Shown here piece by piece: positions 11,939 through 56,081 of a stretch of DNA of 64,000 nucleotides. Location of the stretch: assembly GCA_047495785.1 (NCBI GenBank), contig JBLDXI010000023.1, positions 558,001 through 622,000 on the forward strand, written 5' to 3'. A program made the position numbers and the translations under genes. Numbering within the stretch: the stretch's first letter is position 1; each line of letters begins with the position of its first letter. Source of the DNA: Lepidodermella squamata (taxonomy: Eukaryota; Animalia; Gastrotricha). Below the pieces are notes generated by a model that saw only the letters and a list, made by a program, of their open reading frames with translations, had not been told where the DNA came from and searched no databases.

Positions 11939-12285
11939 AAACAATGAAAAATCAAGAGACATGTCAATAAGACATCAAGTCTAATAAAGTCTAATCCACC
12001 ATCGGATGTAATAATTAATAAAATAAAGCTAAAATGACAGCTACTCGTGGAACTACTGGCGGCTCAGGTGCCAGTGGCTTGACTCCCCCGATTCGAGTTA
12101 CGCGCAGCAAAACTGCAAAAGAATGACTGCTTATTGTGCAATGTGAGTGAAGCACGAAATATAGATCGAGTAAAACGAATGAACCGAGTGAAATCGAGGC
12201 GGAACCAGCCGGTAGGCGAGTGGAGACGAGATTTCACGAGATGAATGCGTTGTACGAGATCTGAGGGGCTTCGTGATCGAACAAC

Positions 12286-12523
12286 TGTGGCGAAGCCACC
12301 TGTTGAATATTGAATTTGAAAGTGGCGGTCGACCTTGACCGAACCTCACGGATACGTGTAGCGTTAATGTAGTGACAAATGGCGAACTATGATTGGCTGG
12401 ATATCGGTATATAAGATGACTTGTTAATAATGTCGGAGAAGATTTCGGAGAATAAACTAGAGATCATTAATAACGTGTTTTATTGTTGCCAGTAGAGCTA
12501 CTAGCCTTGGTCTTCTCGCCACA
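12286..12523 (+). repeat. 5' LTR
   Basis: TG...CA termini, internal TATATAA (~12408) and AATAAA (12451). Confidence 0.95.
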
Positions 12524-12524
12524 C

Positions 12525-12538
12525 TGGTGTCAGAAGTG
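12525..12538 (+). promoter_or_regulatory. Primer-binding site, tRNA-Leu type
   Basis: TGGTGTCAGAAGTG one base after the LTR, complementary to the 3' end ...CACTTCTGACACCA of eukaryotic tRNA-Leu. Confidence 0.8.
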
Positions 12539-13092
12539 TGTGCTTATTTTTCTTTCACGTTTAGGTTATTTACCGGTCCGAACCCGCGATTTGCCGTGGT
12601 CCGCGCCCGAGAGTCGTGAGTTGTGTTATTTCGTTGCAGAGTTAAGGAACAAAATTCGTAGGTGTCTGGTGGTAATTGAACCACAGAGTACGTAAATTAA
12701 ATTCCTCGAGTAAATTCTCCCTTTGAATTTTTGCATACTGGTGGCCACCAAACCTAAATTGTGTCGGTTCAATCGTGAATAGCAAAAAAAAAAAAAAAAT
12801 TTTACGTCGCTGATAGTCATTGATAAAATTATTGGCTGGCTCGAGCCGTGCGAATTTCTGAATTGATCCGTAATAAAAGATAAATTAACAAAAAAACAAT
12901 CGCGAATTTTATAGAGACTTTGACTGAATTACGTCTGCAATAAAGCAAAAAGTTAGCTAGGGGTTTACACGCTACAACTAATCATTTCGGTTCATTTTTT
13001 ACGTCGTCGCGTCGCGCTTTTCTTCGTCGTCGTCGAGGATTTCGGTCGCTTTTAGCCCATCGTTCCATCCACTCGTTCATTTGCGTCGTTCC

Positions 13093-14139
13093 ATGCCCGA
13101 AGTTACGTCAGACCAACTGGCCGAGCTGTCGGCTAAACTTGCCGAGACGCTAAACGCGGTTGCCCAAGCTCAAATAGCCGGAGCGGTTCGAGCTTCCACT
13201 TCGAAAATTATCCCTTATGACGGCAGAGAGGACTTTGGCAATTGGCTAAATCGGGTGAGGAGCCAGTTAGAAATGGAGAAAGTTCCCCCAGAGAAAGCTG
13301 TGCAAGCCATCGCTCTTGCCTTGCCCCGTCGAGGAATGGATATTTATACCGAGATGGTGGACGCTGAGAAAAAGAAAGACCCAGCTAACCCAGCACCAAT
13401 CGAGGCGAAGACTTTCTACGAAAGAGTGCTCGCCCTGTTCGAAGGAGAAGTTCTACCCGCCGAGCTCCTACGCCGTTTCGAGCGGCGCTACCAGCGCCCG
13501 AATGAACGTTTTGCCGAATACGTTCATGACTTGGATAGTCTCCTGCGTCGCTCTGACCCGGAAATGAAAGCTGAACAGCGTTTCATTCGCGTTTGCCTTC
13601 AAGCGCGCCAAGGCTGCTCGTCGCCTCAGCTGAAGCTGGCAATCACTCGTTTCGAACCAGACTCTATGAAGGAATTGCTGGACCTCGCTCGTCGCGAAGA
13701 AGCTGCAGAGGAACTGCAAGCCCGGATGTTCAGTGAGCCCCGAATGAACCTGGTGGAAGCCAGGAATCCTCCAGCGCCGTTGAATGAAGCTGAGGTCCGT
13801 AAGATCGTGGCCGAAGAAATGGCCAAGCAGAAGGAGGCCATGGTTGCTGCCCTGCGAGAAGAGTTGAAGCGCCATGAGGAAGGTTTTTCGAAGTTGGCGC
13901 GCAATGAGAGTCGCTTTCCATCTGCATCCTTCCGAGGCGGTGGGGGAGATAATGATTATTACGAAAGGCCGCCGTTCGGCCGAGGTCAAGGGTATCGTCA
14001 ACGCCAAGGCGGCCCAGAAAGGCCAGGGGGAAGACGAAGCGACGGGTGCTATCGGTGTGGCGTTCCTGGTCACATCGCCCGTGATTGCTCCAATCCGCCT
14101 GATGATTTCGCAAAAAACGGCAAACCGGCGACGCAGTAG
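13093..14139 (+). CDS. gag: Gag (capsid plus one CCHC zinc knuckle)
   Basis: ATG 13093, capsid-like PYDG..F..W and RRYQRPNERFAEY segments, knuckle CYRCGVPGHIARDC. Confidence 0.9.
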   Translation: MPEVTSDQLAELSAKLAETLNAVAQAQIAGAVRASTSKIIPYDGREDFGNWLNRVRSQLEMEKVPPEKAVQAIALALPRRGMDIYTEMVDAEKKKDPANPAPIEAKTFYERVLALFEGEVLPAELLRRFERRYQRPNERFAEYVHDLDSLLRRSDPEMKAEQRFIRVCLQARQGCSSPQLKLAITRFEPDSMKELLDLARREEAAEELQARMFSEPRMNLVEARNPPAPLNEAEVRKIVAEEMAKQKEAMVAALREELKRHEEGFSKLARNESRFPSASFRGGGGDNDYYERPPFGRGQGYRQRQGGPERPGGRRSDGCYRCGVPGHIARDCSNPPDDFAKNGKPATQ

Positions 14140-14171
14140 CCGGGGCGCCGCCGCTGGTCGAAGATCCGGCA
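14112..14171 (+). promoter_or_regulatory. -1 programmed ribosomal frameshift signal (gag-pol)
   Basis: Slippery heptamer A AAA AAC (14112-14118) in the gag frame; the -1 frame is open into pol. Downstream stem ACCGGCG/CGCTGGT, with loop GCCGG able to pair with CCGGC (~14166), suggests an H-type pseudoknot. Confidence 0.8.
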
Positions 14172-14186
14172 CCCTGGATTCCCTTT

Positions 14187-17100
14187 GTGGCTGGGGCACC
14201 TTTCGTTCCAGCCTTCACTCAGGCCGTCGAAATTATGTTGTACAGTACATCGAATAATATTGAACCCAGTGTAGTTAAAACGTCGGTAGTGATAGATTCC
14301 GGCGCTACCATGTCGGCTGTAAGCCGCGCTACAGTGAACTGGCTGAAGCTCAAGGTTGACGAGGAAGATTTGCGCGCCATGAGACCGCTTTACAACACGC
14401 CTATGAGGATCTCTGGGTCAGTACTGTTGACGATGAATTTAGGTAGCACACGTGTGGTCCATCGATGCGCTGTAGTGGAAGAATTGCAACCCTTTATTGT
14501 GCTCGGTGGAGATTTTGTGATTGCGAACGGAGCGAAGTTGAATCTTACGACCCAATCAATGACTCTTGCCAAACCACAATCGAAGGGTTATGTGAAGCTC
14601 AAAAACATTAAGTCCATTCATATTCCCATAAAGCTCAATGGCGTCAAGGTCGAGGCAATTTGTGACACCGGTGCTAATGTCAGCATTCTAGGCGAAAAGG
14701 TTGTACCACGCTTTGGGTTGCAAATTGAACCAACTCGAGTTCCAATCCTAGCGGTTGATGCCAGGGCAGAACCGCTTGAGATCCCCGGGGTGGTCAAGGT
14801 ATCGGCGCAGATCGGCGATCAGGTATTTTGCCCGACAATGTTAGTTACCAAGGCCACGGTGCCTCTGTTATGTGGCCTGGATTTGCTCCGTGAGGTTGCG
14901 AAGGAAATCGATTTCAATGAAATGAAGTTGGTCCTAAAATCGGGCGAGAAAGTTGATCTCGTTCAATCAGGTGTCGATACTGCAAGCATGTGCTTCGTGC
15001 ACACGATGGGAGTTCCCGAAGATAGCACGGTTCCCGAATTATTTGATGCGTCCGCACCGTCGGAGGTTGACATCGAAAATCTGTTAAGTCAGGCTGAAAC
15101 TTGCCCGGAACAGTTACGCGAAAGGTTGAGGCATCTGCTGAAGGCGCACCCCGACGTCCTTGCATGGGGAACAGGCAAGACCAGTTGCATTTCAGGGGTC
15201 GAATTTTCGGTCGACACCGGCGACAGCCCACCTGTCGAGGCGAAGAAAAGATATCATTTTAGCGATTGGCAGCGGGAAGAGATGGATCGCCAAGTTGACG
15301 TTGGGTTGCAGCGTGGTTGGTTTAGGCGCTGTGATGACAGTCCGTACAATGCTCACATGATCCTTACTCGCAAGAAAGGCGGCAAATGGCGAGCGTGTGT
15401 CGATTATAAGCCGCTGAACGCCGAGACACGGTATAAGTCGTATACGATGCCCGACCTTCAGGACCTGATCCGCCGCGTTGGGAAAGCTCGTTATTTTTCG
15501 GTTTTGGATTTTGCTTCGGGATACCATCAAATCAAGGTTTCAGAGGACACCATCAAAAAGCTTGCCTTCACAGTGAACGGTTTCCGGCACCGTGGTAAAT
15601 TCGAGTGGCTCGTGATGCCATTCGGTGTCCGAGGAGGGCCGGCTTGTTTTCAATCCTTCGTCGACAAATTATTTAAAGACCTGATCGATCGTGGGGTCCT
15701 AGTCGTATTTGTTGACGACATTTTCATCTTCACTGAAACCGCTGAGGAACACATGGAGGTGTTAGAAGAGGTTTTTCGCCGTTTAGCGGCAAGGAATGGT
15801 CGACTGAAATGGGAGAAGTTGCGGCTTTACCAATCGCAGGTCGAATTTTTGGGCCACCTCTTAGGCCAGGATGGGTTCGTTCTGAATGAGGAAAACACGA
15901 CTAAGCTGCGCAATTTTCCTTACCCAAAGACCAAGAAAGGCGTCAGGAGTTTCCTTGGGTTGGCGAACTTCGCGAGGCAATTTTCCCCGAGGATGGCCGA
16001 GCTCGCAGCACCGCTGGCTGCTCTCACAGCTAAGTCCGCCAAGTTCGTTTGGTCCCCGGAATGTCAGGCGAATTTTGAGGAAATTAAGAAGATACTAACA
16101 TCAAAACCCGTGTTGGCCTACCCGATTCCCCGATTAGGCGGCTATCGGCTGTACACGGACGCGAGCGAGGTAGCCGTATCGGCATTATTGACTCAAACGC
16201 AGGAAGGTGCTGAGAGGTTAATAGCCGCAGCTAGCATGAAGCTTTCGCCGAGTCAGAGTCGCTATTCCGCAACCAAACGCGAGATGCTCGCGATCCATTG
16301 GGCAGTGACAAAACAGTTTCGTCGATTTTTGTTTGGGTCTAGATTTACAATCCTTACTGACCACAAACCGCTAGTGTATCTGGACAATTTCCAAGATCCC
16401 TCGAATTGCCTATGGTCGTGGAGTCATGATTTGTCTGAATACGATTTTGTAATCCAATACCTACCCGGGTCGATGCAAATAGCCGACAGTCTGTCACGAC
16501 CAGAGGAAGGGCCGTCAACAGGGGAGCAAGGGGATGAGGAGGAGAGTGAAAGTCCGGGCCAAGACCCCATTATCGCTTGGTTCTCGCTGTTGAACGCGCC
16601 GTGGTCAGCGGACCAGATCAGAGCGGCTCAGCTAGCGGACCCTGAGCTAGGTCCTGTACTATCGAAAATCGCAAATGACGAACCGGTGGTTGTAGGGCCC
16701 GAAGAGACACACCGGGTTAAAGTGTTGGCTCGCATGAGCGATCGAATCGTCACTGATGAGGAAGGCGTTTATCATCTGGTCGTAGGGGATCGGCTACTAC
16801 CCCGACAATGTCTACTGGTGCCGGCGAGCATGAGGAATCAGTTTCTTAAGGCGGCGCACGACTCCCCCATGGCTGGCCATTTCGGTAACAGGCGCACGTT
16901 GGCGCGAGCCAGAGATGCGGCATGGTGGGTTGGGATGCCCGCGGATGTAGGAAGGTTTGTGAAACAATGCGAGCCTTGCGCCGTGAATCGGGACTCGTCG
17001 GATCCTCAAAGGTTGCCCCTAACGAGTCCCAAGGAAGAAGCCAAAGAGCCGTTCGATATTGTGCAGATGGATTTCGTTAAGGTGAACCCACCCTCGTCTC

Positions 17101-18692
17101 GTAGGCATAATTGGGTTCTGGAGATAACCGACGTCTATTCGAACTTCGTGGCCGCATACCCCTTGGTCTCGTCAGACGCGGTCAGTACCGCCGATGCCTT
17201 CATCGACTACTGCTGTAGGTGTGACATTCCTCGAGTTTGCATCACTGACAGAGGATCCCAATTCGAAAGTGCCCTGTTTGCCCGCGTTTGCCAGGTCTTG
17301 AATATCGAAAAACGAAGAACGGTTCCATTCAACCCCAGAGGCAATGCCGGGAATGAAAGGCAACACAGAACAACGTTTGACGTGCTCGGGATAATTGCAG
17401 AGAATGGGCGTGACTGGGACAAGAAGCTGCAGTTAGCAGTCAGGGCGTATAATACGTCGCCGCATCAGGCAACTGGCATATCACCGTTTGAAGTTATCCG
17501 TGGCGTACCAGCTCGAAGTCCCATGGAGTTCCTGTGGCAACCGTCGAGACCTGAGCCCAAGGAAGTCTCGCAGTATGTGGAGGATTTGCAGAAAAGATTA
17601 TCGAATGTTCAAGAGATTGTCGACAAGGCGGTGGCGAAACGTTTCGGCCAGTTTAAGCTTCAGTACGACAGAACGGCAAGCCACCGATCCTTCAAACCAG
17701 GAAAGTTTGTTTGGAAAAAGATTGAGCCACCGCTGTCAGGGAAATTTCCGATCAAGTATGATGGTCCTTACGAAGTCATCGAACAGGGCCGATCTCGGAA
17801 CTGCTATCACTTGCGGTCGTGCCGCAGCGCCAGAGTGTTCACGGCCAGTACCCGCCAACTCAAGCCGTGTCCTCGTGAAGTTGGCGAAGCCCATCGGAAA
17901 CGATGGCAAACGCTGAATGCGGATTATCTCGGCCGTCTGCACTACCCGATTCAAGGCCAGGAGCAGCGAGTGAATGAAGAAGAGGCACCGATCTATGAGG
18001 CAAGTTTTGAAGTTCCACCCCCACAAAATTTTTGCTCTTTTCCAGAGAATCTTCCCCTTGAATGGCGGCCAGTTGAGCCGTTGGACGAAGAAGTCGAAGA
18101 AGGGATTCGCGATCGAAGTCGATGTGGTTGGTTGGAAGAAGCTACAACATCTGAAATGCTCGATGTCGTGAAGCCGGATGGGTTCAAGGCGATCATCGAC
18201 GGTCTACAGTTGCTGTCGCAACAGCTGAGGAAGGTTCCGGTGGCCGAGCAGCCACAGCAAGAAGACTCGGCTGACAAGGCTGGAGACGCGTTCAATTTCG
18301 AAGAACCTAGCCACCCGTTCGAATTCGATCTATCTGGCTCGATATCATCAGGTGAGCTCTCATGGCCGGAGCTCGAACATGAGGTCGAACCTGGAAGTGC
18401 CGAAGAAGCTGAAGAAGAGTTCGTGGATGCCACAAGCCGACCACCGAGTGGCCTGCAAGTGATTGTAGCTGAAGCAGAAGCCGAGTCGAAAGTCGAGGAA
18501 GAGGTGGTACTGGAAACTGGTTGTGACACGCTGCCATGGCTGGGCCGAAAAGGTGAAGGAAAGCGTGTTCCGAAGCTGAGTTCGAAGCTTGCCGGTGGGG
18601 AATTCGATCTGTCAGGCGCGTGGAAGCTGGCCAAGGCGACGGCTAGGAAGGCTGCTTCGACGTCGAAAACGGCGCTAAGCTTCTTATGGTGA
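14187..18692 (+). CDS. pol: Pol polyprotein: protease x2, RT, RNase H, integrase, acidic C-terminal extension
   Basis: IDSGA and CDTGA protease motifs, RT LDFASGYHQ / MPFG / FVDD, RNase H TDAS..E..TDH..AD, integrase HHCC (AHDSPMAGH..CEPC), D-D-E and GPY. ORF is uninterrupted. Confidence 0.95.
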   Translation: MAGAPFVPAFTQAVEIMLYSTSNNIEPSVVKTSVVIDSGATMSAVSRATVNWLKLKVDEEDLRAMRPLYNTPMRISGSVLLTMNLGSTRVVHRCAVVEELQPFIVLGGDFVIANGAKLNLTTQSMTLAKPQSKGYVKLKNIKSIHIPIKLNGVKVEAICDTGANVSILGEKVVPRFGLQIEPTRVPILAVDARAEPLEIPGVVKVSAQIGDQVFCPTMLVTKATVPLLCGLDLLREVAKEIDFNEMKLVLKSGEKVDLVQSGVDTASMCFVHTMGVPEDSTVPELFDASAPSEVDIENLLSQAETCPEQLRERLRHLLKAHPDVLAWGTGKTSCISGVEFSVDTGDSPPVEAKKRYHFSDWQREEMDRQVDVGLQRGWFRRCDDSPYNAHMILTRKKGGKWRACVDYKPLNAETRYKSYTMPDLQDLIRRVGKARYFSVLDFASGYHQIKVSEDTIKKLAFTVNGFRHRGKFEWLVMPFGVRGGPACFQSFVDKLFKDLIDRGVLVVFVDDIFIFTETAEEHMEVLEEVFRRLAARNGRLKWEKLRLYQSQVEFLGHLLGQDGFVLNEENTTKLRNFPYPKTKKGVRSFLGLANFARQFSPRMAELAAPLAALTAKSAKFVWSPECQANFEEIKKILTSKPVLAYPIPRLGGYRLYTDASEVAVSALLTQTQEGAERLIAAASMKLSPSQSRYSATKREMLAIHWAVTKQFRRFLFGSRFTILTDHKPLVYLDNFQDPSNCLWSWSHDLSEYDFVIQYLPGSMQIADSLSRPEEGPSTGEQGDEEESESPGQDPIIAWFSLLNAPWSADQIRAAQLADPELGPVLSKIANDEPVVVGPEETHRVKVLARMSDRIVTDEEGVYHLVVGDRLLPRQCLLVPASMRNQFLKAAHDSPMAGHFGNRRTLARARDAAWWVGMPADVGRFVKQCEPCAVNRDSSDPQRLPLTSPKEEAKEPFDIVQMDFVKVNPPSSRRHNWVLEITDVYSNFVAAYPLVSSDAVSTADAFIDYCCRCDIPRVCITDRGSQFESALFARVCQVLNIEKRRTVPFNPRGNAGNERQHRTTFDVLGIIAENGRDWDKKLQLAVRAYNTSPHQATGISPFEVIRGVPARSPMEFLWQPSRPEPKEVSQYVEDLQKRLSNVQEIVDKAVAKRFGQFKLQYDRTASHRSFKPGKFVWKKIEPPLSGKFPIKYDGPYEVIEQGRSRNCYHLRSCRSARVFTASTRQLKPCPREVGEAHRKRWQTLNADYLGRLHYPIQGQEQRVNEEEAPIYEASFEVPPPQNFCSFPENLPLEWRPVEPLDEEVEEGIRDRSRCGWLEEATTSEMLDVVKPDGFKAIIDGLQLLSQQLRKVPVAEQPQQEDSADKAGDAFNFEEPSHPFEFDLSGSISSGELSWPELEHEVEPGSAEEAEEEFVDATSRPPSGLQVIVAEAEAESKVEEEVVLETGCDTLPWLGRKGEGKRVPKLSSKLAGGEFDLSGAWKLAKATARKAASTSKTALSFLW

Positions 18693-19828
18693 CATGGAGC
18701 GAAGTCTTCAAAGACTTATGTATGGTGTGCCGTTAGATGTGAATGTAAGATCGAAAGTTCGTATAATTTTCCTCTGTGATTTTTTTGGTCTCGGAATCGA
18801 GAAGCGATCGGAAGTGATTGTATTAATGAATGAATTGTTGCTACTCTATTCATAACAAAAAGTGTTAATGGTGGTAGTTTACGATTAAATCGCCATGATC
18901 CTCCCAGAAAAAGAGATGATATTTTCGTGCTGGATGAATTACTCATGCATCAGCTCACTGACCCTTTTGCGATTCTTCCCGCTTCTTCAATTGTAAATAT
19001 TTTAATTAATAACCTCTAATATGAAGAAGAATACCTAATGTCGAACGTCTCTCCTCTATAGTCTCGTATTATCTATAATATTGTACATAGTCGATCACAT
19101 CTTGCCTTTTCTCTCAATCAAATTGTCAATCGAACTCTCTCTTTTTCCTTGTGAGATTGTAAATAAATGATATAACACTGATCTACATTTCTTATATCTT
19201 CTCTCTCCAATCCTCTCCCTTGCCCTGTACCCTGTACAACAGTGATCCTTCCCCACAGTGACGCCTTCTTATTGCCTCTGTCCCTTCTATTCTTTCATTC
19301 TTCTGTTCTTGCCAAATAACATTTTCCCTTATGAAATAATGTACATACAATTGCCTGAAACCTGCTCTTCTCAAATCGATGATCTATAATCCGTTGAAAA
19401 TCATATGAAGTACCGTTCTCATTTACGTGAAAGAAATTTATATTTGCCCGCTTGTCAATATTTATGATTTCAGAATGTCGGTTGGGCGATGAGCCAGGCG
19501 GCCCGGTCCGGCTTCGATGGATGTCGCCGAGCCGAGGAAGCTTGGGGGTCGTCTCTTCTCGACCAGCGGGAACACGAGAAGTTTTGAAGCCCTAGCGGCG
19601 AATATTACCAATGAATAAACGTTTGCCTTTCAGATCATCGAGATTGCGGTTTGGGTCTTCGCTAGTCTTATTCTAATCTTATCTAATCTTATCTAAATCG
19701 TATTCTTGAAACTTCTGTCTTGGTCGTGTATCTTAGGCCTGGTCTTGTGCGTGGCTGTTCGAGTAACCGTGAACTGTATATATCTTATATGCTGTCTCTT
19801 TCTTATCCTTATATCTATATTGTAAACC

Positions 19829-19843
19829 GAAAGGTGGGAGGAG
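19829..19843 (+). promoter_or_regulatory. Polypurine tract
   Basis: GAAAGGTGGGAGGAG abutting the 3' LTR. Confidence 0.85.
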
Positions 19844-20081
19844 TTTGGCGAAGCCACCTGTTGAATATTGAATTTGAAAGTGGCGGTCGACCTTGACCGA
19901 ACCTCACGGATACGTGTAGCGTTAATGTAGTGACAAATGGCGAACTATGATTGGCTGGATATCGGTATATAAGATGACTTGTTAATAATGTCGGAGAAGA
20001 TTTCGGAGAATAAACTAGAGATCATTAATAACGTGTTTTATTGTTGCCAGTAGAGCTACTAGCCTTGGTCTTCTCGCCACA
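19844..20081 (+). repeat. 3' LTR
   Basis: Matches the 5' LTR except that it begins TT instead of TG. Confidence 0.95.
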
Positions 20082-22031
20082 ACAACATTATTATATTTAT
20101 AGTGCGATCATAGAGCAAAAAATGACCAGAGTAAGCACTCAAGGGGTGTTTTTTTTATTCGACCCGGCTTGCCCGCGCCCGCACTGCCCTCGCACGTTCA
20201 TTTATTCCACCCAGACCGCCCGAACACATTTTTTTATTCGCCCGGCTTGCCCGCACTCTAGACAACGCCCATAACGCCCAGCCTCTCAAGACCGGGCAGC
20301 TGCGGGAAAATGCACGCGATTCGAAGCAGCAAAAAATTGCATAAAAACACCAAATATAAGTCATCAAGTAGTGCAAGTGACTATATTTCTGCTGCTGAAT
20401 AATAATTCAGAAAATTATAAGACAAATGAAAATCATTTGAAAATATTTATGCTTAATAAGAAGTGTGGTGAAATCGCAGCGATTGACAAGCGATTCCGGG
20501 TGGGTACTTCATCGTAGACTCGGCTATCGAATCACAATAGCAGTGGTAGAATGATACCGAACGTCTAAACCCGTTTTAATTATCAAATTTTAATAATGCT
20601 GCATTAAACAGTCCTTAATTATTATTTTATCAAATCCAAATTATTGAATCAGTTATCGGTAATTATCTTTATCTTTTTCTGATTTTGGAGCTGCGTCTAT
20701 GCCTATAGTAAAACCATGGTGATTTTGGTTAAATTCGCAACAAATTTTGAATTCATAATTCGAGCCTCCGTTCAAAATTTTAGAAAATTAGAAAAACTTC
20801 ATGACAATTTTAGAAAATTGGCGAATCATGGAGAATCATATGAGGTCGAATTTGTCTATCCGAAGCGAGTCAAACATCGGAATTAAATTTTGCGTGGCGA
20901 ATGACCTTGACCATCAGGTTGACCAGGCCTTCAGAATATTTTTAATGCTGAAGAATAGGAATTTGAGATCAGAAATATATCACATGAAACAAAACTGAGA
21001 TTGGTCATATTTCTATTCATTTAATCATGCTGTAGATTTTGTCAAGTTAGACTGGAATGATGCGAATAATTTTCCCTTTGTTTGTGAGCATAAGCATGAA
21101 TCAGCAATCATTCAGAATCAGCAAAAGAAAACACCCAAGCTAACACTTCATTTTTATTCAAAGTTGAATCAAAGTTGAATCTCAAAACGGATATCTCCGT
21201 TTTTTACCAAATTTTGCATGCCTATAGAACACGAGCTGCTCTTTATATTGTCGAGATTTTCCGAAGGTGCTCAAGTACTTCTACCCCTCTAGTTTTCATA
21301 GGGGCGAGACTTTCACGCATCAATTCATGTAAAGTTTGCCCCTTCCATTTGACTAAAGATAAGGATAAAATGCTCAAGAAATGATTCGAATTTCATAAAA
21401 TTGACAAGCGAGCATTTGCCTAGAGGCTATAACGATTTAAAATATTGTTGGTTGAAATGGCTGTAAAGGGTTATTCTATAGTTGCACGAGTAAAAAGTCT
21501 ATATCTGAACGGAGCCGGCCGAGATTTACGAATACTATGCTGAAATTTCACGAACATGGGCTCCCAAAATTCTGCTCCGATTGGTTATGCGGACGCATTC
21601 GAAGCCCAATGGTTCGAAAACCCATCAACCCTGAAACGAAATCTTTCGCGAAAAATTTGCCGCTTTTCAATCCGAAGAAAGTGGTTCGATTAGAACGACA
21701 AGCGAATGCGATGCACGAGACTCGAAAGCAGTCCGTCGAAATTTCATCTCTGGTTGTAAAAAAATGGCTCAGTTTCGGACAAGCGCGTCTCAACGGTGTT
21801 TGGTACGGCCATTTTTTCAACACAATCGGTGCTGTCACTGGCGGAATGGTGCAAGGTGATATCCCCTGTGGTGATTTCTGCGAATCGTTTCTTGATCTTT
21901 TCGAATAATTTGTACTAAATTGGTGCATTCCGTTTTATTGCGTGCAGACTGTAGACTTGCGTGCAGACTGGGATTATGCAAGGCTGCTTCTTCTCTTCCC
22001 GGTTTGCAGATTGATAAGAAACAACAGCACA

Positions 22032-34184: not shown

Positions 34185-37100
34185 ATGGTGAAACTAGGAT
34201 GGCTGGCTTTCTTCTATTTAGTTGCTGAATCAACTTGCTCGGATAGCATCAACAACGTATGGCATTATTTTTCCATAGCAGCTCTCAAAATAGCTATCGA
34301 TTGACCACTATGTTCGATGCTGAACTCGATGTGCTAATGGCTTATAGCGTTGCGGTTTTAATAGTAGGACTATGATTTTGCGCAGTTTTAACCATGAGTC
34401 GTTGCGAGGAAACTGCTGCTCAAAACCGAACCAGGCCATATTGGGTTCACATTTGTAGTCGTGTTGAGGCTTGGGCTTGGGCCGAAATTCCCGTTTTATC
34501 TTGAAATGCAACGTTTGATAGATTATAGCACATTAGCTCGCTGCAATGGGGATTATATCCAGTTCAGCATTTAATTTTCCAAAATGCATCCGATCAACTG
34601 TTGAAAACATTCAGTTCTTTGTATCTTTGTTCTTCTGTTTTATCTCTGTCCTTCATAAAAATCAGGCTTTTGTTCATGCCGCTGGAAACGGGCAAATATC
34701 GACTGTACGCCGATGGCTCTCAAGAGGCATAGTGGATATCAACGCCAAAGTGCCAGGTTATAACGGGGAGATCACTACAGCCCTCCTCAAAGCCGTGAGA
34801 TCAAATGCAAGCTACGACATGGTGTCGCTTCTGCTGGAAAATGGAGCAAAAGTCGATGATGTTGAGCAAGGCCCCAGTAATTTTTCTGCTCTCCACTTGG
34901 CGGCCATCTGTGGCCGGCTTGATCTTGTGAAACTTCTAATTGAGAAATTCAAAGCAAACGCGACTGCTCGAGATGCTTACGGCAATACAGCTATCATGAC
35001 AATGTTCCTAGGCAGTAACGTAGCACCTGAATACTTGAACCTTATGCGATACTTGTTGCCACTCGTCGATTTCAGCGCTAGGAATAAGGACAATGAAACA
35101 ATACTGCATCTTGTCCGAAGAATTTACTCGGCAGGTAAGAAAATTACAAAAAAAACAGAAGTACTTACTAACAGTTAACTCTTTCCTGGGCATGAGGCTT
35201 GTGAAAATTAGCATTTAAATTTGATGAATTGTTGATCGTCCGTTCGAGGAGTACTACTTTTCGATGTTCGCTATAACAATACAAAACAAAGCGCCGTTAT
35301 CCGGCAAGGTAAGGACATGGTAGCTATTTTAAGTAGTCTAATCGAGATGAAAACTAGTTCTAACTGATTTCTTTCCTCAGCAAAATAAATTGAGAGTTTC
35401 AGGGACTGTTAGGGAGGGGCTTAGAACTTGAAATGCTGAAACTAGGGTGTTTGAAGTTTGAAAAAGTGCTGATATCAGATGGGCCAATTGGGCGATTTCG
35501 AGCACTTTTTGTACAGCCTTAACGGTGATGGATAGAGACAAGCGGGTTTCAAAGTCGTAATCAGGACCCCTAAAGCCCGTAGAAATGTTTAAATCAAATA
35601 TTTTTCTACCGGAGATAAATAATTCGGCCATGAAATGGTTAAGATCGGCTGGGGGAGACTGGCTGATTGTTGAGCCAACGGCTGAAGCTTTAAGCATGGT
35701 AAATGTAGTAAATGCTTAGTGGTAAACGTGGGAGCTTATTAAAACTTATTAAAACTTTTGCTTGAGTTTCTATAATCCGTCCTTCAGAGTCAGCGATTAC
35801 GCACTAAGCATAATGTTTCCGATTTTCCGGGTCAAATTCCACACTCAGCCACTGCTGTCATCCATCAGCCACGGTCAGCTCGCGTGTTGTCGTCCAGAGA
35901 GCTTGGTGACTTGGTGACTTGATGACTTGGTCGTGTCATTGCAGTTTTCAATCCAAATTTCGCATGATTTTTCCAGGTGTTACTTACACTGCAGCACCTC
36001 TAACCTTTATTTCTTACCTGTATCATTAATCACCATAACATCAGCGGGCAGATTTTCATTATGAAAATTTTTCAGGTCAAGGCATCTATGCTTTGATGAC
36101 TTACAAACAAAATGATTTCGTTGGCCATATCATTAAACAGTGGTTAATAAGTCCCTAAATTACTTCAAAAACTCATTCCGAACTAAAAGCAAGAGGTTAA
36201 AACATGAACAGAACCGCAATTCACCCGTTTCTTGATAGCAAGTTGCAAGGGACTTCCCGATCATTTTCAGAACACATTATAGGTGCTGCAGTGTAATAAG
36301 CAACACCTGGAAAAATCATGCGAAATTTGGATTGAAAACTGCAATGACACGACCAAGTCACCAAGCTCTCTGGACGACAACACGCGAGCTGACCGTGGCT
36401 GATGGATGACAGCAATGGCTGAGTGTGGACTTTGACCCGGAAAATCGGAAACATAATGAGCAATACTGAACTGACTCCTAAGGTATGCTGTAGATGTTAG
36501 AATTTCGTAAATTCCCCTCAGAACGCCTGGTTGAAAGTGATGGCCTCCGCTCAAAGCCACAGCGCTAACAAATCAACACATTTGCAGCCAGTGTGCGACT
36601 TTCAGGGGGGGATGGGGGGGATCATCCCCCCCAGCTCGGCCGGGCCAGACAACAAAATGAGAATTTATCCCACTGTTTTGTTAATTTTGCAAGGTTCTGG
36701 GGCGTGTTTTAGTGGAAATTCTCCAAAAGTTTCTCGCTCCGCTCGGTTATTAGCCGAAATGACACGTCATTTTGGCAAATACAGCAAAAAAATTTTTTCC
36801 ATCCCCGGGAGCTCGGGGATCGAAGATCGCACCCTGTTTGCAGCTGAAAATTTCTCGAAAAATTGAAAGTTCACTGAATTCTGCAGACTCAGGATAGGGG
36901 TAGTATATCAAGCTCAATTCGAACTACAATTATTGACTATCTTTTTTTCCTAATGAGGTATGCTGTAGCCTGATAGGGCTCAGAAAACATCTACCAGTGT
37001 GACTGAATTTCACTTATTTTGGTATATTTCTGTGACACTGTGATACTTGAAGTCAACTTAATGTGCTTATGTGAAAAGATCCGCTTCCATTCGTCCAGTT

Positions 37101-39683
37101 GCTGCTGGAAACCAACGAGGGCCGACTAGACATCAATGCTCGCGACAAGGATGGCAACACGCCGCTGCTGCTCGCTACGAAAGCCGGTAAATCAACTGCC
37201 TTGGTTCGATACCTCATCGAAAAAGGCGCCGATACCAACGCAACCAACAACCAAAATGTAAACATGCTACTCGCAGCCTGCCAAGTCGATCGCCCTTTCT
37301 CTAAACCGGACCCTCTTTCATTCATCAAAATCGCTGTTGAAATGGGTGGTGTTGACGTCAATTCTCAAAGCGTAGACGGGAGCCGGTGTTTCAGTTTCCT
37401 AATTTACCGGGAATTGGTGTCTCGGCCTATCTATGATTTGGATTTTCTTCCAATCATGGCATACCTATTAAGGAAAGGCTACGTCGTCGACAACAATGAT
37501 TTCGGCTTCACGCCACTCATGTCAACAGTTTCTTCATACCCTGATCGCCCAAGATTGCTCGATTTGCTGCTGGAAAATGGCGCCGATGTCAACGCGACAG
37601 ATTACAACGGCAGAACGGCAGTTGATATTGCATTGGCTGTATTTTCGAAAATGACTACGGCGTATTTGCGTAGGCGAGGCGGTGTTTCTGGGAAAGAGAC
37701 TCATAGAGTAACATCGATGCCGCGTCAAACTGCCACGCCATTTCAGCAGCGGATTGTAACGCCTGACTGGCCTGCGTGGCAACCGCAACCATCCGCAACT
37801 GAATCTATCACAACTCAATCTGATCAAGAAAAGCAAGACTCCGTAATTGAAATACTTAGTTATTCAAAGTTAAATTGTCAGCATTATAAAACCCTTCCCC
37901 AATTAGGAATTTATCGACTTTATCACAGCTGGCAATTTTAGTGCTGTGAAGCAAATGATTGAAGAAAAGCGAACTACAGGAGATGCTTTTCGCTTGGAAT
38001 TGGTGAGTAACTACTACGTCATCATCCCAACCGTAGCCAAAGCTGTCATAGCCGAAAATGCTTCAATTGACATGGTAAAGTTGCTTCTTGAAAATAACGG
38101 CGATCCAGACGCGATTCACCCGGGAGCGAGTCTCACCCCATTGATGATCGCTTTGGACGAAAACCGGCTGGACATGGCGAAACTTCTTATCGACCATGGG
38201 GCTGATGTTAACCATATTCGACCATCGGGTGATTATGAAGAAGCATTTCACGAAACTGCATTGCTGAGAGCTGCATCGAGATCACTGGAACACGTCAAAT
38301 TTCTCATCGCAAATGGAGCTGTGAAGGATAAAGATCGGTTATTATTTGAGGCTTGTAAAATCCAATATCCAATACCGAATACCAAACAAATCCCCGATGC
38401 ACTGCCGTTTGTGAAATTCGCTGTGGAAGAGGCTGATAATTCCCCGAATGGCTTCGATTCATTCGGGAGAACGTCATTGTTAATTGCAGCAGACGAGCTG
38501 AAAGCGCCCGATCGCATGCAAGTTATCGAGTACTTGTGGTCTAAAGGAGCCAATCCTCTATTGAATGACTTGTCTACGAAGGGCTACACCCTTCTGCATC
38601 TAGCTGTGGATAAGCAGGATTTTGATTTCGTGCGGTTTGCCGTGGAGAAGATGAACATGAGTTTGGAAATTCGTGATTCTTACGGCTTCACGCCGCTTTT
38701 GTTGGCTGCGAACAACAGGCTTGACGAAATTGCAAATTATTTGCTGCAGCGTGGCGCTGACAAAAATGCGATTGACCTGCTTGGCAACAACGCGTTTTTG
38801 CACGCTTGTCGTGAATCCCCGCCGTTCATGCTGGCTAAACTGTTGATCAATCAATACGAATTTGACGTCAACTCACAGGTAATTTTGCCAAAGCTCACGT
38901 TGATAATGGGAGATGATGGTGAGGTGGTTCTACGTCCTAGAAACATTACCACCAAGGCTCCTGTTGCACGCAGTTTAGTCAAGCATAGCATGTAGGATGG
39001 GTTTCATGCTTCGGCTTATCATCAAAAAGGCTTACATATATTACGGACAGCTCAACATTAAGAATCAGATTTTTTCTTGCTTTCATTTGCGAGCATTCAT
39101 CTCTATTTTCTCCAAAACCTTCAGGGATTTCTATATGCGAATTTTCGATATAAATAGGCTAATGGCATAGTGCAGGCTTCTCCAACTTGGGTCCTTTTTC
39201 CTTGGGTGACGAGGAATGTCTGATGATTTCTGTAAAATATACCGAAGATTTAGTTCACTTTTGATCACTCTTCCAAAAAAGTATTCAAAAACAGCGTTGG
39301 CTAATGGTCGTTATTTCTAGAATTATGACAACGAAACGTGTCTGGCTCTCGTTTATCAACTGCGCGGCTTGGGCGATTTCCCGAAATTTCTTGTGTCAAG
39401 AGGATACGACATCAATCGAAAGCTACGCAATGGCGATACTGTTCTTGCTTTGCAAGTGAGTCAAGCTGAGACTTTCAACATTGATGCGATGTTTGAAGCT
39501 GGAGCGGATATCAATGCGGAAAGCGACGATGGACTAACTCCGCTGGATCTGGCCCTGCTTTACGAAAATACAATAGCGGCCAATGCTTTGATAGCACTGA
39601 AGGCTGTAACGTCGAGGCCATTGCCGAAATACGTGACTTTGCCGGCTCCCGGCCCACTATCCAAGACAAAACCGGCCTTATAA
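34185..39683 (+). CDS. Signal-peptide-bearing ankyrin-repeat protein, copy 1 (~879 aa)
   Basis: Exons 34185-34256, 34666-35134, 37079-37842, 37907-38878, 39321-39683, all phases compatible. Many G.TPL..A / LL..GAD.N ankyrin repeats. Exon 1 encodes MVKLGWLAFFYLVAESTCSDSINN. Confidence 0.85.
35213..35345 (-). repeat. Dispersed repeat, inverted copy of 8244-8378 / 23530-23664
   Basis: Reverse complement matches TAGACTA..TACCATGTCCT..CATCGAAAAGTAGTA..GATCAACAA..CATCAAATT. Confidence 0.7.
35810..36458. repeat. Inverted repeat (~185-bp arms, ~275-bp spacer) in ankyrin copy 1 intron 2
   Basis: 35810-36003 is the reverse complement of 36277-36458 apart from an internal GACTTGGT expansion and a few mismatches. 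Confidence 0.85.
36589..36836. mobile_element. hAT-like MITE
   Basis: CAGTGTGCGACTT...AAGATCGCACCCTG with 8-bp TSD TTTGCAGC (36581-36588, 36837-36844). A shorter diverged relative lies at 56520-56633. Confidence 0.8.
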
Positions 39684-40759: not shown

Positions 40760-42144
40760 TACAGAAATTTTGTTGCAAAATCACTTCCTAGAGTCCAGAA
40801 ACCTCCTACCTCGCCATCAATATGGCTTTAGGTCCCTTCGATCTTTGCAACAAAATTTCTGTATCACTTCCTAGAAATTTTGTTGCAAAATCACTTCCTA
40901 GAGTCCAGAAACCTCCTACCTCGCCATCAATATGGCTTTAGGTCCCTTCGATCTACCATCGACCCAGTGTTCAGATTCATATCTGACATTGGCATCTCCA
41001 TCTCGAAACGATACAAGCTGGTGGCGTTGCTCCTTGACTTCAAGGCTGCGTTCGATTGCATCTGGCACGATGGTCTTCGAACCAATTAAGCTGAAGCAAT
41101 CAGGTGCCCCGGAACCAATCGTCAGATGGGTGTCCGACTTTCTGCGCGACCGCTCATTTCAGGTCCGCGTCGGCTCTGAACTTAGTGATTCGCGGCCTAT
41201 CTGCTGTGGTGTGCCGCAAGGCTCGCCACTGTCGCCCCTTTTATTCATTTTTTACGCTGCAGAAATGCAGCCGAAGGATTCCAAGCCAGACGACGGCTCC
41301 CATCGTGTCGCGAAAGGCACGTTTGCCGACGACGCGCTCAACTGGGCGTATGGTGTGAACTACCACACCTGCGTCAGCCGCCTGCATAGGCGCCTGCGGG
41401 TTATCGAACAATGGTGCAATCGCTGGAGATTGCGTCTCAACCCGGCCAAGTGCGAGTCGATGGTTTTCGGCCACTACGGACGCACGCCACCCTCTGTCGC
41501 CCTTGAGCTCTATGGCCAGCCGATTCCGCAGGTCAACCGAGTCCGTTATCTTGGCATTCACCTGACGCCTCAGCTGAGCTGGAACTACCACATAAGCGTT
41601 GTAGCCGCGAAGCTCAGGCCCCGGGTGGGGTCACTGTATGCCCTTTGCAAACGCAATATACTTAATAAGCGCACTTGCGTTCTTCTGTATAAATCCCTTC
41701 TAGAGTCCTTGGTTGCCTATGGAGCACCTGCCTTGCGCTGCATGCCCTTGTCATCCTGGAAGCAGCTGACGGATCTGCAAGCCCACTGCCTTAGAGCCCT
41801 CCTTGATCTGCCCTTCGAAGTTGAGCCTTGTGACGCCCTTGCCTTCGCTGGAGTCGACTCCATCGAAGAAGTGTTCCATCGAAGTTTTGAACGATATGGA
41901 GGCCGCTGCTTAGCGGCTGATCTTGACATGGCGGAGTATATCAAATACGTCGCCGAAATCGCACCTTCTGATGAAAAAGCCCGTCAAAGCTTGGAGCAAA
42001 AATGCCCCGCCTGGCATTTGCGAAACGAAACCAGAACCGAAATAATCTCAGCTGATAACCGCGTATGGCTAGATATCGAATGCTAAGAACAAAATCAACG
42101 AAAAATCAACAGAAATCAATGAAAAACGGCATGAAAAAAAAAAA
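40760..42144 (+). mobile_element. 5'-truncated non-LTR retrotransposon (Jockey/I-like RT)
   Basis: QYGFR..ST, LDFKAAFD, GVPQGSPLSPLLF, FADD, LNPAKC, RYLG. Frameshift near 41085, ~80-bp tandem duplication at the 5' end (40763-40842 / 40873-40952), A-rich tail at ~42134. Confidence 0.88.
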
Positions 42145-55100: not shown

Positions 55101-56081
55101 GAAATCGCAAATTATTTGCTGCAGCGCGGCGCGGACAAAACTGCGGTTGACATATATGGCAGCAACGCGTTTCTGCTGGCTTGCAACTACCGATCCTCGC
55201 CGTTCAAACTAGCGTGGCTTTTGCTCACTGAATACGGATTCGATGTGAACTCACAGGTAATTTTCTCTCAGCGAAATCAAATAACAAAAGCTGCAGCCAT
55301 ATGCAGATTAGTTAAGAAAATTAGCAAAACAAAATTCAATCAAGGGCGATACCTGAAGGAGGTTCCATAAAATAGGTAATTTTTGCTGTCCAGTGCCCAG
55401 TGCCGTATTTTCCATTAGGCATCTGCCTTATTGGGCATAATGCATTGTCATTGTCCAATGTCCACTCCGGGCAGAAAATGACTTTTTGAGGGATTCATAA
55501 TCTGCTCATCGCGGTCTACAATAAATCGAAATTGTGATGTGAATATTGCGAAATTTTCAGAGTTCTCATTTTACGGACGTGGCGACATTGTCCCGGGGCA
55601 AGGATAGCGTTTTTCAGAAATAAATAATCATTATCAAAAAATCCAGAATACCAAACTTGTTTTAACGCTTGCTAATAGACGATATTTGTAGAATTATAAC
55701 AACGATACATGTCTGGCTCTTGTTTATCAATTGCGCGGCTTGGGCGACTTTGCAACGTTTCTCGTGTCAAGAGGATACGACATCAATCGAAAGCTACGCA
55801 ATGGCGATACTGTTCTAGCTTTGCAAGTGAGTCAGTCCGAAACTTACAACATTGATTTGATGCTTGAAGCTGGGGCTGATATCAATGCGAAAAGCGACGA
55901 TGGGCTAACTCCGCTGGATCTGGCCTTGCTTTACGGAAATAGCATCGCGGCGAAAGCTTTGATAGCACTGAAGGCAGTAACGTCCAGGCCATTGCCGAAC
56001 TACGTGACTTTGCCGGCTCCCGGCCCACTATCCACGACAAAGCGGCCTCTGACCAATAATTACGATTTATATTATCCATAA
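52200..56081 (+). CDS. Signal-peptide-bearing ankyrin-repeat protein, copy 3 (~888 aa)
   Basis: Exons 52200-52274, 52711-53215, 53264-54006, 54303-55256, 55692-56081. Exon 1 encodes MAKLLDWLAFFCLVAGSACSDHINN. Intron 2 has a GC donor. Confidence 0.8.

What the first reader, a model, noticed from the sequence alone, without database searches (positions are those of the whole stretch)
14260..14945. Ty3/gypsy pol with two complete tandem aspartic protease domains
Seen: domain 1 has VVIDSGATMS...IVLGGDF (DSG at 14295) and domain 2 has AICDTGANVS...LLCGLDL (DTG at 14664). Each is ~100 aa with both the catalytic motif and the C-terminal (I/L)(L/C)G-x-D motif. The two are highly diverged and lie in an intact, recently inserted element. 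Established: retropepsins have one such domain and work as homodimers, whereas pepsins are single-chain bilobed enzymes thought to derive from duplication and fusion. Inference: this may be a single-chain pseudo-dimeric retroelement protease that needs no Gag-Pol dimerisation to activate, or two proteases with different specificities.
Basis: partly seen in the sequence, partly recalled or inferred. Interest (0 to 1): 0.8.

Follow-up and report, generated by a model that had tools for sequence, protein, structure and literature searches.

The report
Jumping gene with a doubled protease
An intact Ty3/gypsy-type jumping gene in an unidentified small animal genome carries two different retroviral-type protease domains in a row, which two structure predictors pack into a single pepsin-like enzyme with one active site; I found no published description of this layout in retroelements.

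Summary
The pol frame (14187-18692) of an intact LTR retrotransposon has two non-overlapping retropepsin domains. PR1 is residues 31-131 (DSG at 14295). PR2 is residues 146-241 (DTG at 14664). Each passes Pfam gathering cut-offs on its own and each keeps the catalytic motif and the hydrophobic-Gly-x-Asp motif.

The element has 236-nt identical LTRs, a 5-bp target duplication, a gag with a CCHC knuckle and an A_AAA_AAC -1 slippery site. Independent read contigs tile the junction between the two domains.

The tandem is not a private accident. The closest relative by RT-RNaseH-integrase (P0012, 34% identity over 1216 residues, reciprocal best hit) has the same collinear PR1-PR2, with both motifs intact. 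At least two other retroelement contigs, and a Caenorhabditis japonica protein of unknown context, carry independently duplicated tandem proteases.

AlphaFold2 (pLDDT 84.9, pTM 0.81) folds the tandem as a pseudo-dimer that superposes on tethered HIV-1 protease dimers (182-186 residues, rmsd 3.0-3.8 A). A complex test of PR1 with PR2 passes (0.69, best control 0.00). These predictions could come from memory of solved dimers.

The element is unique among 49 protease loci in its genome. Six literature searches found no description. My verdict is a new variant of a known kind. The single-chain mechanism is likely but unproven.

The parts
12281..12285 (.). Target-site duplication, left copy (ACAAC)
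   Evidence: Read directly. The same five bases follow the 3' LTR.
12286..12523 (+). 5' LTR (238 nt, TG...CA)
   Evidence: Direct repeat 12288-12523 / 19846-20081 is 100% identical. The ends were read. One mismatch at LTR position 2.
12525..12540 (+). Primer-binding-site-like stretch beginning TGG, one base after the LTR
   Evidence: Read. The tRNA identity was not tested.
13093..14139 (+). gag (first ATG of the ORF that opens at 13081), with one CCHC zinc knuckle
   Evidence: ORF, translation, Pfam zf-CCHC 30.2 bits.
14112..14118 (+). A_AAA_AAC slippery heptamer in the gag frame, in the gag/pol overlap; pol is in the -1 frame
   Evidence: Read, frames. The downstream RNA fold is no better than shuffles (z -0.18).
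14187..18692 (+). pol open frame (open from about 14106): PR1-PR2-RT-RNaseH-integrase plus an acidic tail with no domain match
14277..14579 (+). Protease domain 1 (pol residues 31-131). Catalytic Asp37 in D-S-G-A at 14295-14297; G-G-D-F motif at residues 107-110
   Evidence: Pfam Asp_protease_2 27.4 bits and RVP_2 22.7 bits, both above cut-off. AF2 block pLDDT is mostly 87-93, with dips to 63-78 at model residues 41-60.
14568..14615 (+). Linker between the last strand of PR1 and the first strand of PR2 (pol residues 128-143)
   Evidence: Loop between strands E110-113 and E130-136 of the model; block pLDDT 68-72.
14622..14909 (+). Protease domain 2 (pol residues 146-241). Catalytic Asp160 in D-T-G-A at 14664-14666; G-L-D-L motif at residues 230-233
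   Evidence: Pfam gag-asp_proteas 34.1, Asp_protease 32.0 and RVP 22.9 bits, all above cut-off. Matches DDI1 RVP structures at Z 14.5-15.2, rmsd 1.9-2.4 A.
15369..15857 (+). Reverse transcriptase (residues 395-557)
   Evidence: Pfam RVT_1 108.3 bits.
16050..16442 (+). RNase H (residues 622-752)
   Evidence: Pfam RT_RNaseH_2 90.3 bits and RT_RNaseH 90.9 bits.
16818..17336 (+). Integrase: H2C2 zinc domain (878-935) and core (953-1050)
   Evidence: Pfam Integrase_H2C2 65.2 bits and rve 46.9 bits.
19830..19843 (+). Polypurine tract (AAAGGTGGGAGGAG) abutting the 3' LTR
   Evidence: Read.
19844..20081 (+). 3' LTR
20082..20086 (.). Target-site duplication, right copy (ACAAC)

Best explanation
This is an intact Ty3/gypsy-type LTR retrotransposon. 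Its Gag-Pol, made by a -1 ribosomal frameshift, starts with two diverged retropepsin domains joined by a 16-residue linker. The most likely mechanism is that PR1 and PR2 fold against each other within one chain into a pseudo-dimer. Asp37 and Asp160 would form a single catalytic dyad, Ser38 and Thr161 would form the fireman's grip, and the two C-terminal strands would pair at the interface. That gives a small asymmetric pepsin-like protease that cuts Gag and Gag-Pol. Shown here: two bona fide domains, both catalytic motifs, conservation of the tandem in the nearest relative, and contiguity in reads. Predicted here: the intramolecular packing. Inferred only: that activation is independent of Gag-Pol dimerisation, and that the two unlike halves give an asymmetric substrate cleft.
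For: Each domain passes Pfam gathering cut-offs on its own. The nearest relative by RT-RH-IN alone, P0012, is a reciprocal best hit (563 and 551 bits, against 483 and 456 for the next). It aligns collinearly through both domains at 34% identity over 1216 residues, with D-T-G / G-L-D-F in PR1 and D-S-G / G-Y-D-W in PR2. So both active sites were kept across deep divergence. The AF2 model of the tandem has pLDDT 84.9 and pTM 0.81. It superposes on tethered or single-chain HIV-1 protease dimers over 182-186 of about 200 residues at rmsd 3.0-3.8 A, Z 14.3-15.1. It also superposes on a two-lobed Bacteroides endopeptidase (9iy9; 213 residues, 3.1 A, Z 14.8) and on renin and other pepsins (about 200 residues, Z about 10.6). 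The P0012 model behaves the same way (pLDDT 78.6, pTM 0.66; 188-191 residues on tethered dimers, Z 12.6-13.4). The complex test of PR1 with PR2 scored 0.69, best of 3 controls 0.00. That mark was reached by 51 of 78 solved complexes and 2 of 108 mismatched pairs. Runs agree in at least 93% of contacts and the partner's pLDDT is at least 79. Contacts include chain 1 residue 24 with chain 2 residue 26, and residues 101-107 with 103-109. Tandem proteases arose independently in other retroelements: L039 is gag-CCHC / PR-PR / RT and L041 is gag-CCHC / PR-PR. In those proteins the two halves are each other's closest kin.
Against: All structural evidence is prediction. The predictors have seen many retropepsin homodimers and tethered dimers, so a pseudo-dimer may be recalled rather than deduced. 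The complex tool itself warns that a pass does not tell which family member binds, and it did not use my alignments. The alignment behind the AF2 models is shallow (17 rows, only 5 covering PR2). I could not read coordinates, so the Asp-Asp distance in the AF2 model was not measured. From established knowledge (Krausslich 1991, recalled, not re-read here), a tethered protease dimer inside HIV-1 Gag-Pol fires prematurely and blocks particle formation. A constitutively paired protease would therefore need some other brake. No RNA or protein data exist for this element.
Confidence: 0.58

Rival explanations
1. There are two separate proteases. Each domain pairs with its own kind across two Gag-Pol chains, giving a PR1 homodimer and a PR2 homodimer with different specificities or timing.
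For: Both domains keep complete catalytic and structural motifs, which a homodimer also needs. The two are very unlike each other (20.8 bits), as expected if they diverged in function. PR2 alone looks like an ordinary DDI1/retropepsin monomer (Z about 15). Homodimerisation is the rule for every characterised retroelement protease (PMC2642776).
Against: Both predictors pair PR1 with PR2 in the canonical geometry. The short linker holds the two at very high local concentration, which favours the intramolecular pair. Homodimers were not tested, so this is weak evidence against.
Confidence: 0.22
2. Only one domain is the working protease. The other, most likely the fast-evolving PR1, is a non-catalytic partner: a regulatory lobe, a substrate-binding lobe or an inhibitory lobe that caps the active domain until it is cleaved off.
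For: PR1 sits on a very long branch (2.61 against a median of 0.94). It scores only just above the Pfam cut-offs. Its flap region is modelled with lower confidence (block pLDDT 63-78).
Against: PR1 keeps D-S-G-A and G-x-D here, and D-T-G and G-L-D-F in P0012. That is unexpected for a lobe freed of catalysis over this much divergence.
Confidence: 0.14
3. It is a neutral accident with no function: a recent recombination or duplication in this one copy, or an assembly error.
For: There is only one full copy in the 121-Mb assembly. It is the only one of 49 protease loci with two domains.
Against: The same collinear tandem is present in the closest relative at 34% identity, from other samples. The frame is open for 1501 codons. 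Independent contigs tile the junction. LTR relatives at 71-93% identity show the family is old in this genome.
Confidence: 0.03

Closest known systems
Retropepsins of LTR retroelements and retroviruses (clan AA; Pfam RVP, RVP_2, gag-asp_proteas), and the related DDI1 RVP domain
   Same: Each of the two domains has the fold, size, D-S/T-G-A motif and hydrophobic-Gly-x-Asp motif of a retropepsin monomer. They sit between gag and RT. The predicted pairing geometry is that of a retropepsin dimer.
   Different: Known members have one domain per polyprotein and work as homodimers of two chains (PMC2642776). Here two unlike domains lie in one chain and are predicted to pair with each other.
Engineered tethered (single-chain) HIV-1 protease dimers (PDB 1hvc, 1g6l, 1lv1, 4eqj)
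   Same: Two retropepsin units are joined head to tail by a short linker and fold as one active-site body. The model superposes over 182-186 residues at rmsd 3.0-3.8 A.
   Different: Those are artificial and their halves are identical or nearly so. This one is natural, about 22% identical between halves, has a 16-residue linker and sits in a retrotransposon.
Pepsin family (A1): renin, endothiapepsin, plasmepsins
   Same: Single chain, two homologous lobes, one Asp from each lobe. About 200 residues superpose at rmsd 3.6-4.2 A, Z about 10.5.
   Different: Pepsin lobes are about 160-170 residues with extra sheets, a single flap, disulfides, a signal peptide and a propeptide. No Pfam A1 match was found here. 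Not a member.
Bacterial two-domain retropepsin-like proteins (PDB 9iy9 of Bacteroides fragilis; Rv0977 C-terminal domain 4ehc; ESM Atlas clusters, mostly Verrucomicrobiota)
   Same: Natural single chains with two small retropepsin-like lobes. They are the best whole-model structural matches (TM by query 0.72-0.76, 207-221 residues at rmsd 2.0-3.0 A; 9iy9 Z 14.8).
   Different: They are cellular, often secreted bacterial proteins that are not part of a retroelement. Their sequence similarity is no higher than to any other retropepsin (E about 1e-4).

Membership tests
Ty3/gypsy (Metaviridae) LTR retrotransposon | Long terminal repeats ending TG..CA, flanked by a short target-site duplication | tested here: met
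   238-nt LTRs, 236 nt 100% identical, with a 5-bp ACAAC duplication.
Ty3/gypsy (Metaviridae) LTR retrotransposon | pol domain order protease - RT - RNase H - integrase, with gypsy-type RT_RNaseH and Integrase_H2C2 domains | tested here: met
   Pfam positions 31-241, 395-557, 622-752 and 878-1050.
Ty3/gypsy (Metaviridae) LTR retrotransposon | gag with a nucleocapsid zinc knuckle, plus a primer-binding site and a polypurine tract | tested here: met
   CCHC knuckle. TGG-initiated stretch one base after the 5' LTR, and a purine run abutting the 3' LTR. The tRNA identity of the primer site was not tested.
Retropepsin (clan AA single-domain aspartic peptidase), PR1 | D-S/T-G-A catalytic motif and hydrophobic-hydrophobic-Gly-x-Asp motif, with a family profile score above the curated cut-off | tested here: met
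   D-S-G-A at residues 37-40, G-G-D at 107-109. Asp_protease_2 27.4 bits (cut-off 24.3), RVP_2 22.7 bits (cut-off 20.3).
Retropepsin (clan AA single-domain aspartic peptidase), PR2 | D-S/T-G-A catalytic motif and hydrophobic-hydrophobic-Gly-x-Asp motif, with a family profile score above the curated cut-off | tested here: met
   D-T-G-A at residues 160-163, G-L-D at 230-232. gag-asp_proteas 34.1 bits (28.2), Asp_protease 32.0 (26), RVP 22.9 (20.7).
Retropepsin (clan AA single-domain aspartic peptidase) | One domain per chain; active as a homodimer of two chains | tested here: not met
   Two domains lie in one chain and are predicted to pair with each other. The oligomeric state itself cannot be measured here.
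Retropepsin (clan AA single-domain aspartic peptidase) | Proteolytic activity that depends on the Asp residues | not testable with these tools
   Needs expression and an assay.
Pepsin family A1 | Profile match to the A1 family, lobes of about 160-170 residues, signal peptide and propeptide | tested here: not met
   No A1 family appears among the Pfam hits at E up to 1. The lobes are about 100-120 residues and lie inside a polyprotein.
Pepsin family A1 | Single chain with two homologous lobes that each give one catalytic Asp to one cleft | tested here: inconclusive
   Met in sequence layout and in predicted models only.

The most novel reading that the evidence does not exclude
A small clade of Ty3/gypsy retrotransposons, plus at least two other retroelement lineages independently, has turned the obligate-homodimer retroviral protease into a natural single-chain asymmetric enzyme. 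These would be living counterparts of the duplication-and-fusion step long proposed for the origin of pepsins. They would also be a natural experiment in uncoupling protease activation from Gag-Pol dimerisation.
Probability: 0.5. Interest if true: 0.75.

Novelty: new variant of a known kind. Interest (0 to 1): 0.62.

Why it matters
Retroviral-type proteases are the textbook case of an enzyme that exists only as a dimer of two identical chains. That requirement is thought to time the maturation of virus-like particles. Pepsins are thought to descend from such a protease by duplication and fusion, and the known natural single-chain forms with small lobes are poorly studied bacterial proteins. 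A retrotransposon that has kept a fused, diverged pair of protease domains across deep divergence offers three things. It gives a natural system for asking how a retroelement manages a protease that may be pre-paired. It gives diverged halves for studying how asymmetry in the substrate cleft evolves. It shows the fusion step has happened several times. Annotation pipelines that expect one protease per element will merge or miss the second domain.

Tried and rejected
1. Word-indexed protein searches restricted to the tandem region found nothing for the window protein and only the query itself for P0012. This reflects the method's sensitivity, not absence. The exhaustive search found 82 weak hits, including P0012.

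2. A 70-row alignment (A1) collapsed nearly every sequence onto PR2, so I dropped it. I used a 17-row alignment that keeps both domains in register.

3. Origin of the second domain. A maximum-likelihood tree of 87 protease domains was a quick search, because the careful search did not finish. It left WIN and P0012 PR1 and PR2 unresolved on long branches. Pairwise scores favour positional orthology only weakly: PR1-PR1 38.1 bits and PR2-PR2 37.7, but WIN PR1 with P0012 PR2 is also 35.4. The distance from the catalytic Asp to the RT motif in single-protease relatives has a median of 369 residues. That lies between the distances for PR1 (404) and PR2 (281), so it does not show which domain is the extra one. 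An ancient tandem duplication and capture of a foreign protease both remain possible.

4. Capture of the host DDI1 gene. PR2 is weakly similar to solved DDI1 RVP domains (E 1e-4). The strongest PF13975 locus in the genome (C42:4069667) was not among the matches of the tandem region, so there is no support for capture.

5. Frameshift-stimulating RNA structure. The fold downstream of the slippery site is no better than shuffles (z -0.18).

6. A degraded relative on contig C32 starts at the first residue of PR2, with no PR1 or gag upstream. It is truncated, so it says nothing about the age of PR1.

7. ESM Atlas search by features returned only single-domain clusters.

8. None of the 120 closest full-length pol homologues has two adjacent proteases. 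The few with two hits are fused multi-element predictions.

Full report
**1. What is there.**
The region lies in a 7.8-kb LTR retrotransposon.
- Two 238-nt LTRs (12286-12523 and 19844-20081) share 236 identical bases in a row. They end in TG..CA and are flanked by the 5-bp duplication ACAAC.
- A TGG-initiated primer-binding-like stretch follows the 5' LTR. A purine run (19830-19843) abuts the 3' LTR.
- gag (13093-14139) carries one CCHC knuckle.
- pol is open from about 14106 to 18692 in the -1 frame. The overlap contains the classic slippery heptamer A_AAA_AAC at 14112-14118 in the gag frame. The RNA downstream does not fold better than shuffles.
- Pfam gives the gypsy order: protease, RT (395-557), RNase H (622-752), integrase (878-1050). 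The last 300 residues or so are acidic and match nothing.
- The element is 49-50% G+C in a 39-44% background.

**2.
- Both motif pairs are at the stated coordinates.
- Scanned separately, residues 1-136 and 137-258 each exceed curated Pfam cut-offs for retropepsin families.
- The halves are only about 22% identical over 58 residues.
- Contigs of a public run tile 14112-14545 and 14516-16720 without differences, so the junction is not an assembly artefact.

**3. How unusual it is in its own genome.**
The genome is 121 Mb in 151 contigs. Earlier notes of this scan call it an unidentified small-intron animal.
- It holds one full copy of this element. The next-closest RT is 37% identical.
- A genome-wide scan with PF13975 found 49 protease loci. 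Only this open frame has two.
- The family is not a newcomer. LTR relatives occur at 91-93% identity (three loci) and at 71-79% (about ten more). Some lie about 1.9 kb apart around a piece of the 3' internal region.

**4. Relatives elsewhere.**
- The exhaustive search of 1.84 billion representatives with the 278-residue tandem found only 82 hits, the best at E 1.4e-8.
- One hit, P0012 (1387 residues, from two Logan assemblies), aligns collinearly with pol at 34% identity over 1216 residues, through both protease domains.
- Pfam sees its proteases at 68-166 and 183-266 and its RT from 404. Its motifs are D-T-G / G-L-D-F and D-S-G / G-Y-D-W.
- Its gag and pol also overlap in the -1 frame.
- On RT-RNaseH-integrase alone, this element and P0012 are reciprocal best hits among about 130 pol proteins (563 and 551 bits, against 483 and 456 for the next).
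- None of the 120 closest other pol proteins has adjacent tandem proteases.
- So the tandem looks like a shared trait of a small, sparsely sampled clade. Both catalytic sites have survived more than 60% sequence divergence, which argues for selection on both.

**5. The same idea arose elsewhere.**
- About a dozen of the 82 hits have two or more protease domains in one protein, mostly adjacent.
- P0057 lies between a CCHC gag and an RT (L039). P0017 follows a CCHC gag (L041).
- P0005 is a Caenorhabditis japonica protein.
- In these, the two halves are each other's closest relatives: 62.8, 46.6 and 107 bits. The P0057 and P0005 pairs have 95-99% SH-aLRT support in the tree. They are therefore independent and more recent duplications.
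- P0061 is an isolated tandem-protease ORF in a eukaryotic chromosome with no large neighbouring ORF.
- P0064 and P0077 look bacterial.

**6. Predicted structure.**
- AlphaFold2 on a 17-row alignment that keeps both domains in register (A2) gave pLDDT 84.9 and pTM 0.81.
- VIA-align superposes the whole model on tethered or single-chain HIV-1 protease dimers: 182-186 of about 200 residues, rmsd 3.0-3.8 A, Z 14.3-15.1.
- It also superposes on the two-lobed Bacteroides protein 9iy9 (213 residues, 3.1 A, Z 14.8), on Rv0977-C (188 residues, Z 11.3) and on pepsins (about 200 residues, Z about 10.6). PR2 alone matches DDI1 RVP domains at Z about 15.
- The ESM Atlas shape search returns bacterial two-domain aspartyl-protease clusters: TM by query 0.72-0.76, 207-221 residues at 2.0-3.0 A.
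- The P0012 tandem gives the same picture: pLDDT 78.6, pTM 0.66, 188-191 residues on tethered dimers.

**7. Complex test.**
- PR1 and PR2 as separate chains scored 0.69, with the best of 3 controls at 0.00.
- That mark was reached by 51 of 78 solved complexes and 2 of 108 mismatched pairs.
- Runs agree in at least 93% of contacts, and the partner's pLDDT is at least 79.
- Contacts include Ser of D-S-G against Thr of D-T-G, and the pairing of the two strands that follow the helix. This is the canonical retropepsin interface.
- The tool did not use my alignments. It warns that a pass for a family with solved complexes may be memory and does not tell which member binds.

**8. Interpretation.**
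- The best-supported reading (0.58) is an intramolecular pseudo-dimer with one dyad, Asp37 plus Asp160.
- From established knowledge, tethers of a few residues give active HIV-1 protease. Such a tether inside HIV-1 Gag-Pol causes premature processing. If this reading is right, the element must tolerate or restrain early activity in some other way. That part is inference.
- Rivals are two separate homodimeric proteases (0.22), one catalytic domain plus one accessory domain (0.14), and a neutral accident (0.03).
- Whether the second domain came from an ancient tandem duplication or from capture of a foreign protease could not be resolved.

**9. Literature.**
- Six full-text searches found no description of two protease domains in an LTR retroelement.
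- The clan AA survey states that LTR retroelement peptidases are single-domain and dimerise (PMC2642776).
- The library lacks most subscription journals, and Repbase, Dfam and GyDB could not be searched. 'Undescribed' is therefore provisional.

**10. Handling.**
The profile built was used only to count domains.

Noticed in passing
window 12536-14516 and 13823-14112: Contigs of the one public run that holds the element also show two deleted forms. One joins 12536 (just after the 5' LTR) to 14516, inside the G-G-D-F motif of PR1, skipping 1979 bases at depth 46. The other replaces 13824-14111 in gag with 5 letters, at depth 28. Depths add up across the joints (about 70 upstream, 117 downstream). 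The sample therefore holds more copies or alleles than the assembly shows.
   Followed up: partly
window 12286-12601: Word depth over the LTR is about 700-1100, against about 70 for the internal region, in that run. The assembly holds about 20 LTR-like matches at 71-93% identity. They include pairs about 1.9 kb apart on contigs C74 and C26 around a piece of the 3' internal region, which are possible non-autonomous derivatives.
   Followed up: partly
window 17787-18689: The last 300 residues or so of pol, after the integrase, are acidic and of low complexity. They match no Pfam family and there is no chromodomain.
   Followed up: partly
window 18693-19843: About 1.15 kb lies between the pol stop and the 3' LTR with no open frame over 60 codons on the + strand, so there is no env-like gene. 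P0012's contig has a 102-codon ORF in the same place.
   Followed up: no
window 12001-20000: The element is 49-50% G+C while the flanks are 39-44%.
   Followed up: no
window 46822-50986 (- strand): A LINE-type element: a 1070-codon ORF with an AP-endonuclease domain and an RT, preceded by a 296-codon ORF with no family match. A further RT fragment lies at 40932-42083.
   Followed up: partly
window 37099-38995; similar ORF pairs at 44464-46297 and 53284-55370: The first pair of ORFs encodes ankyrin-repeat proteins. The other two pairs look alike by ORF layout only. This fits the ankyrin families that earlier notes of this scan report for this genome.
   Followed up: partly
window 57167-58369: An ORF with Cys-loop neurotransmitter-gated channel domains (ligand-binding and membrane), probably an exon block of a host gene.
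   Followed up: no
L040:6001-6852: P0061 is a 283-residue tandem-protease ORF in a 78-Mb eukaryotic chromosome (GCA_015104395.2). No other ORF of 150 codons or more lies within 6 kb. It could be a relic or a domesticated single-chain protease.
   Followed up: partly
L039:760-1656: Here the tandem protease is an ORF of its own between gag and the RT ORF, overlapping the latter. This resembles a gag-pro-pol layout with two frame changes.
   Followed up: no
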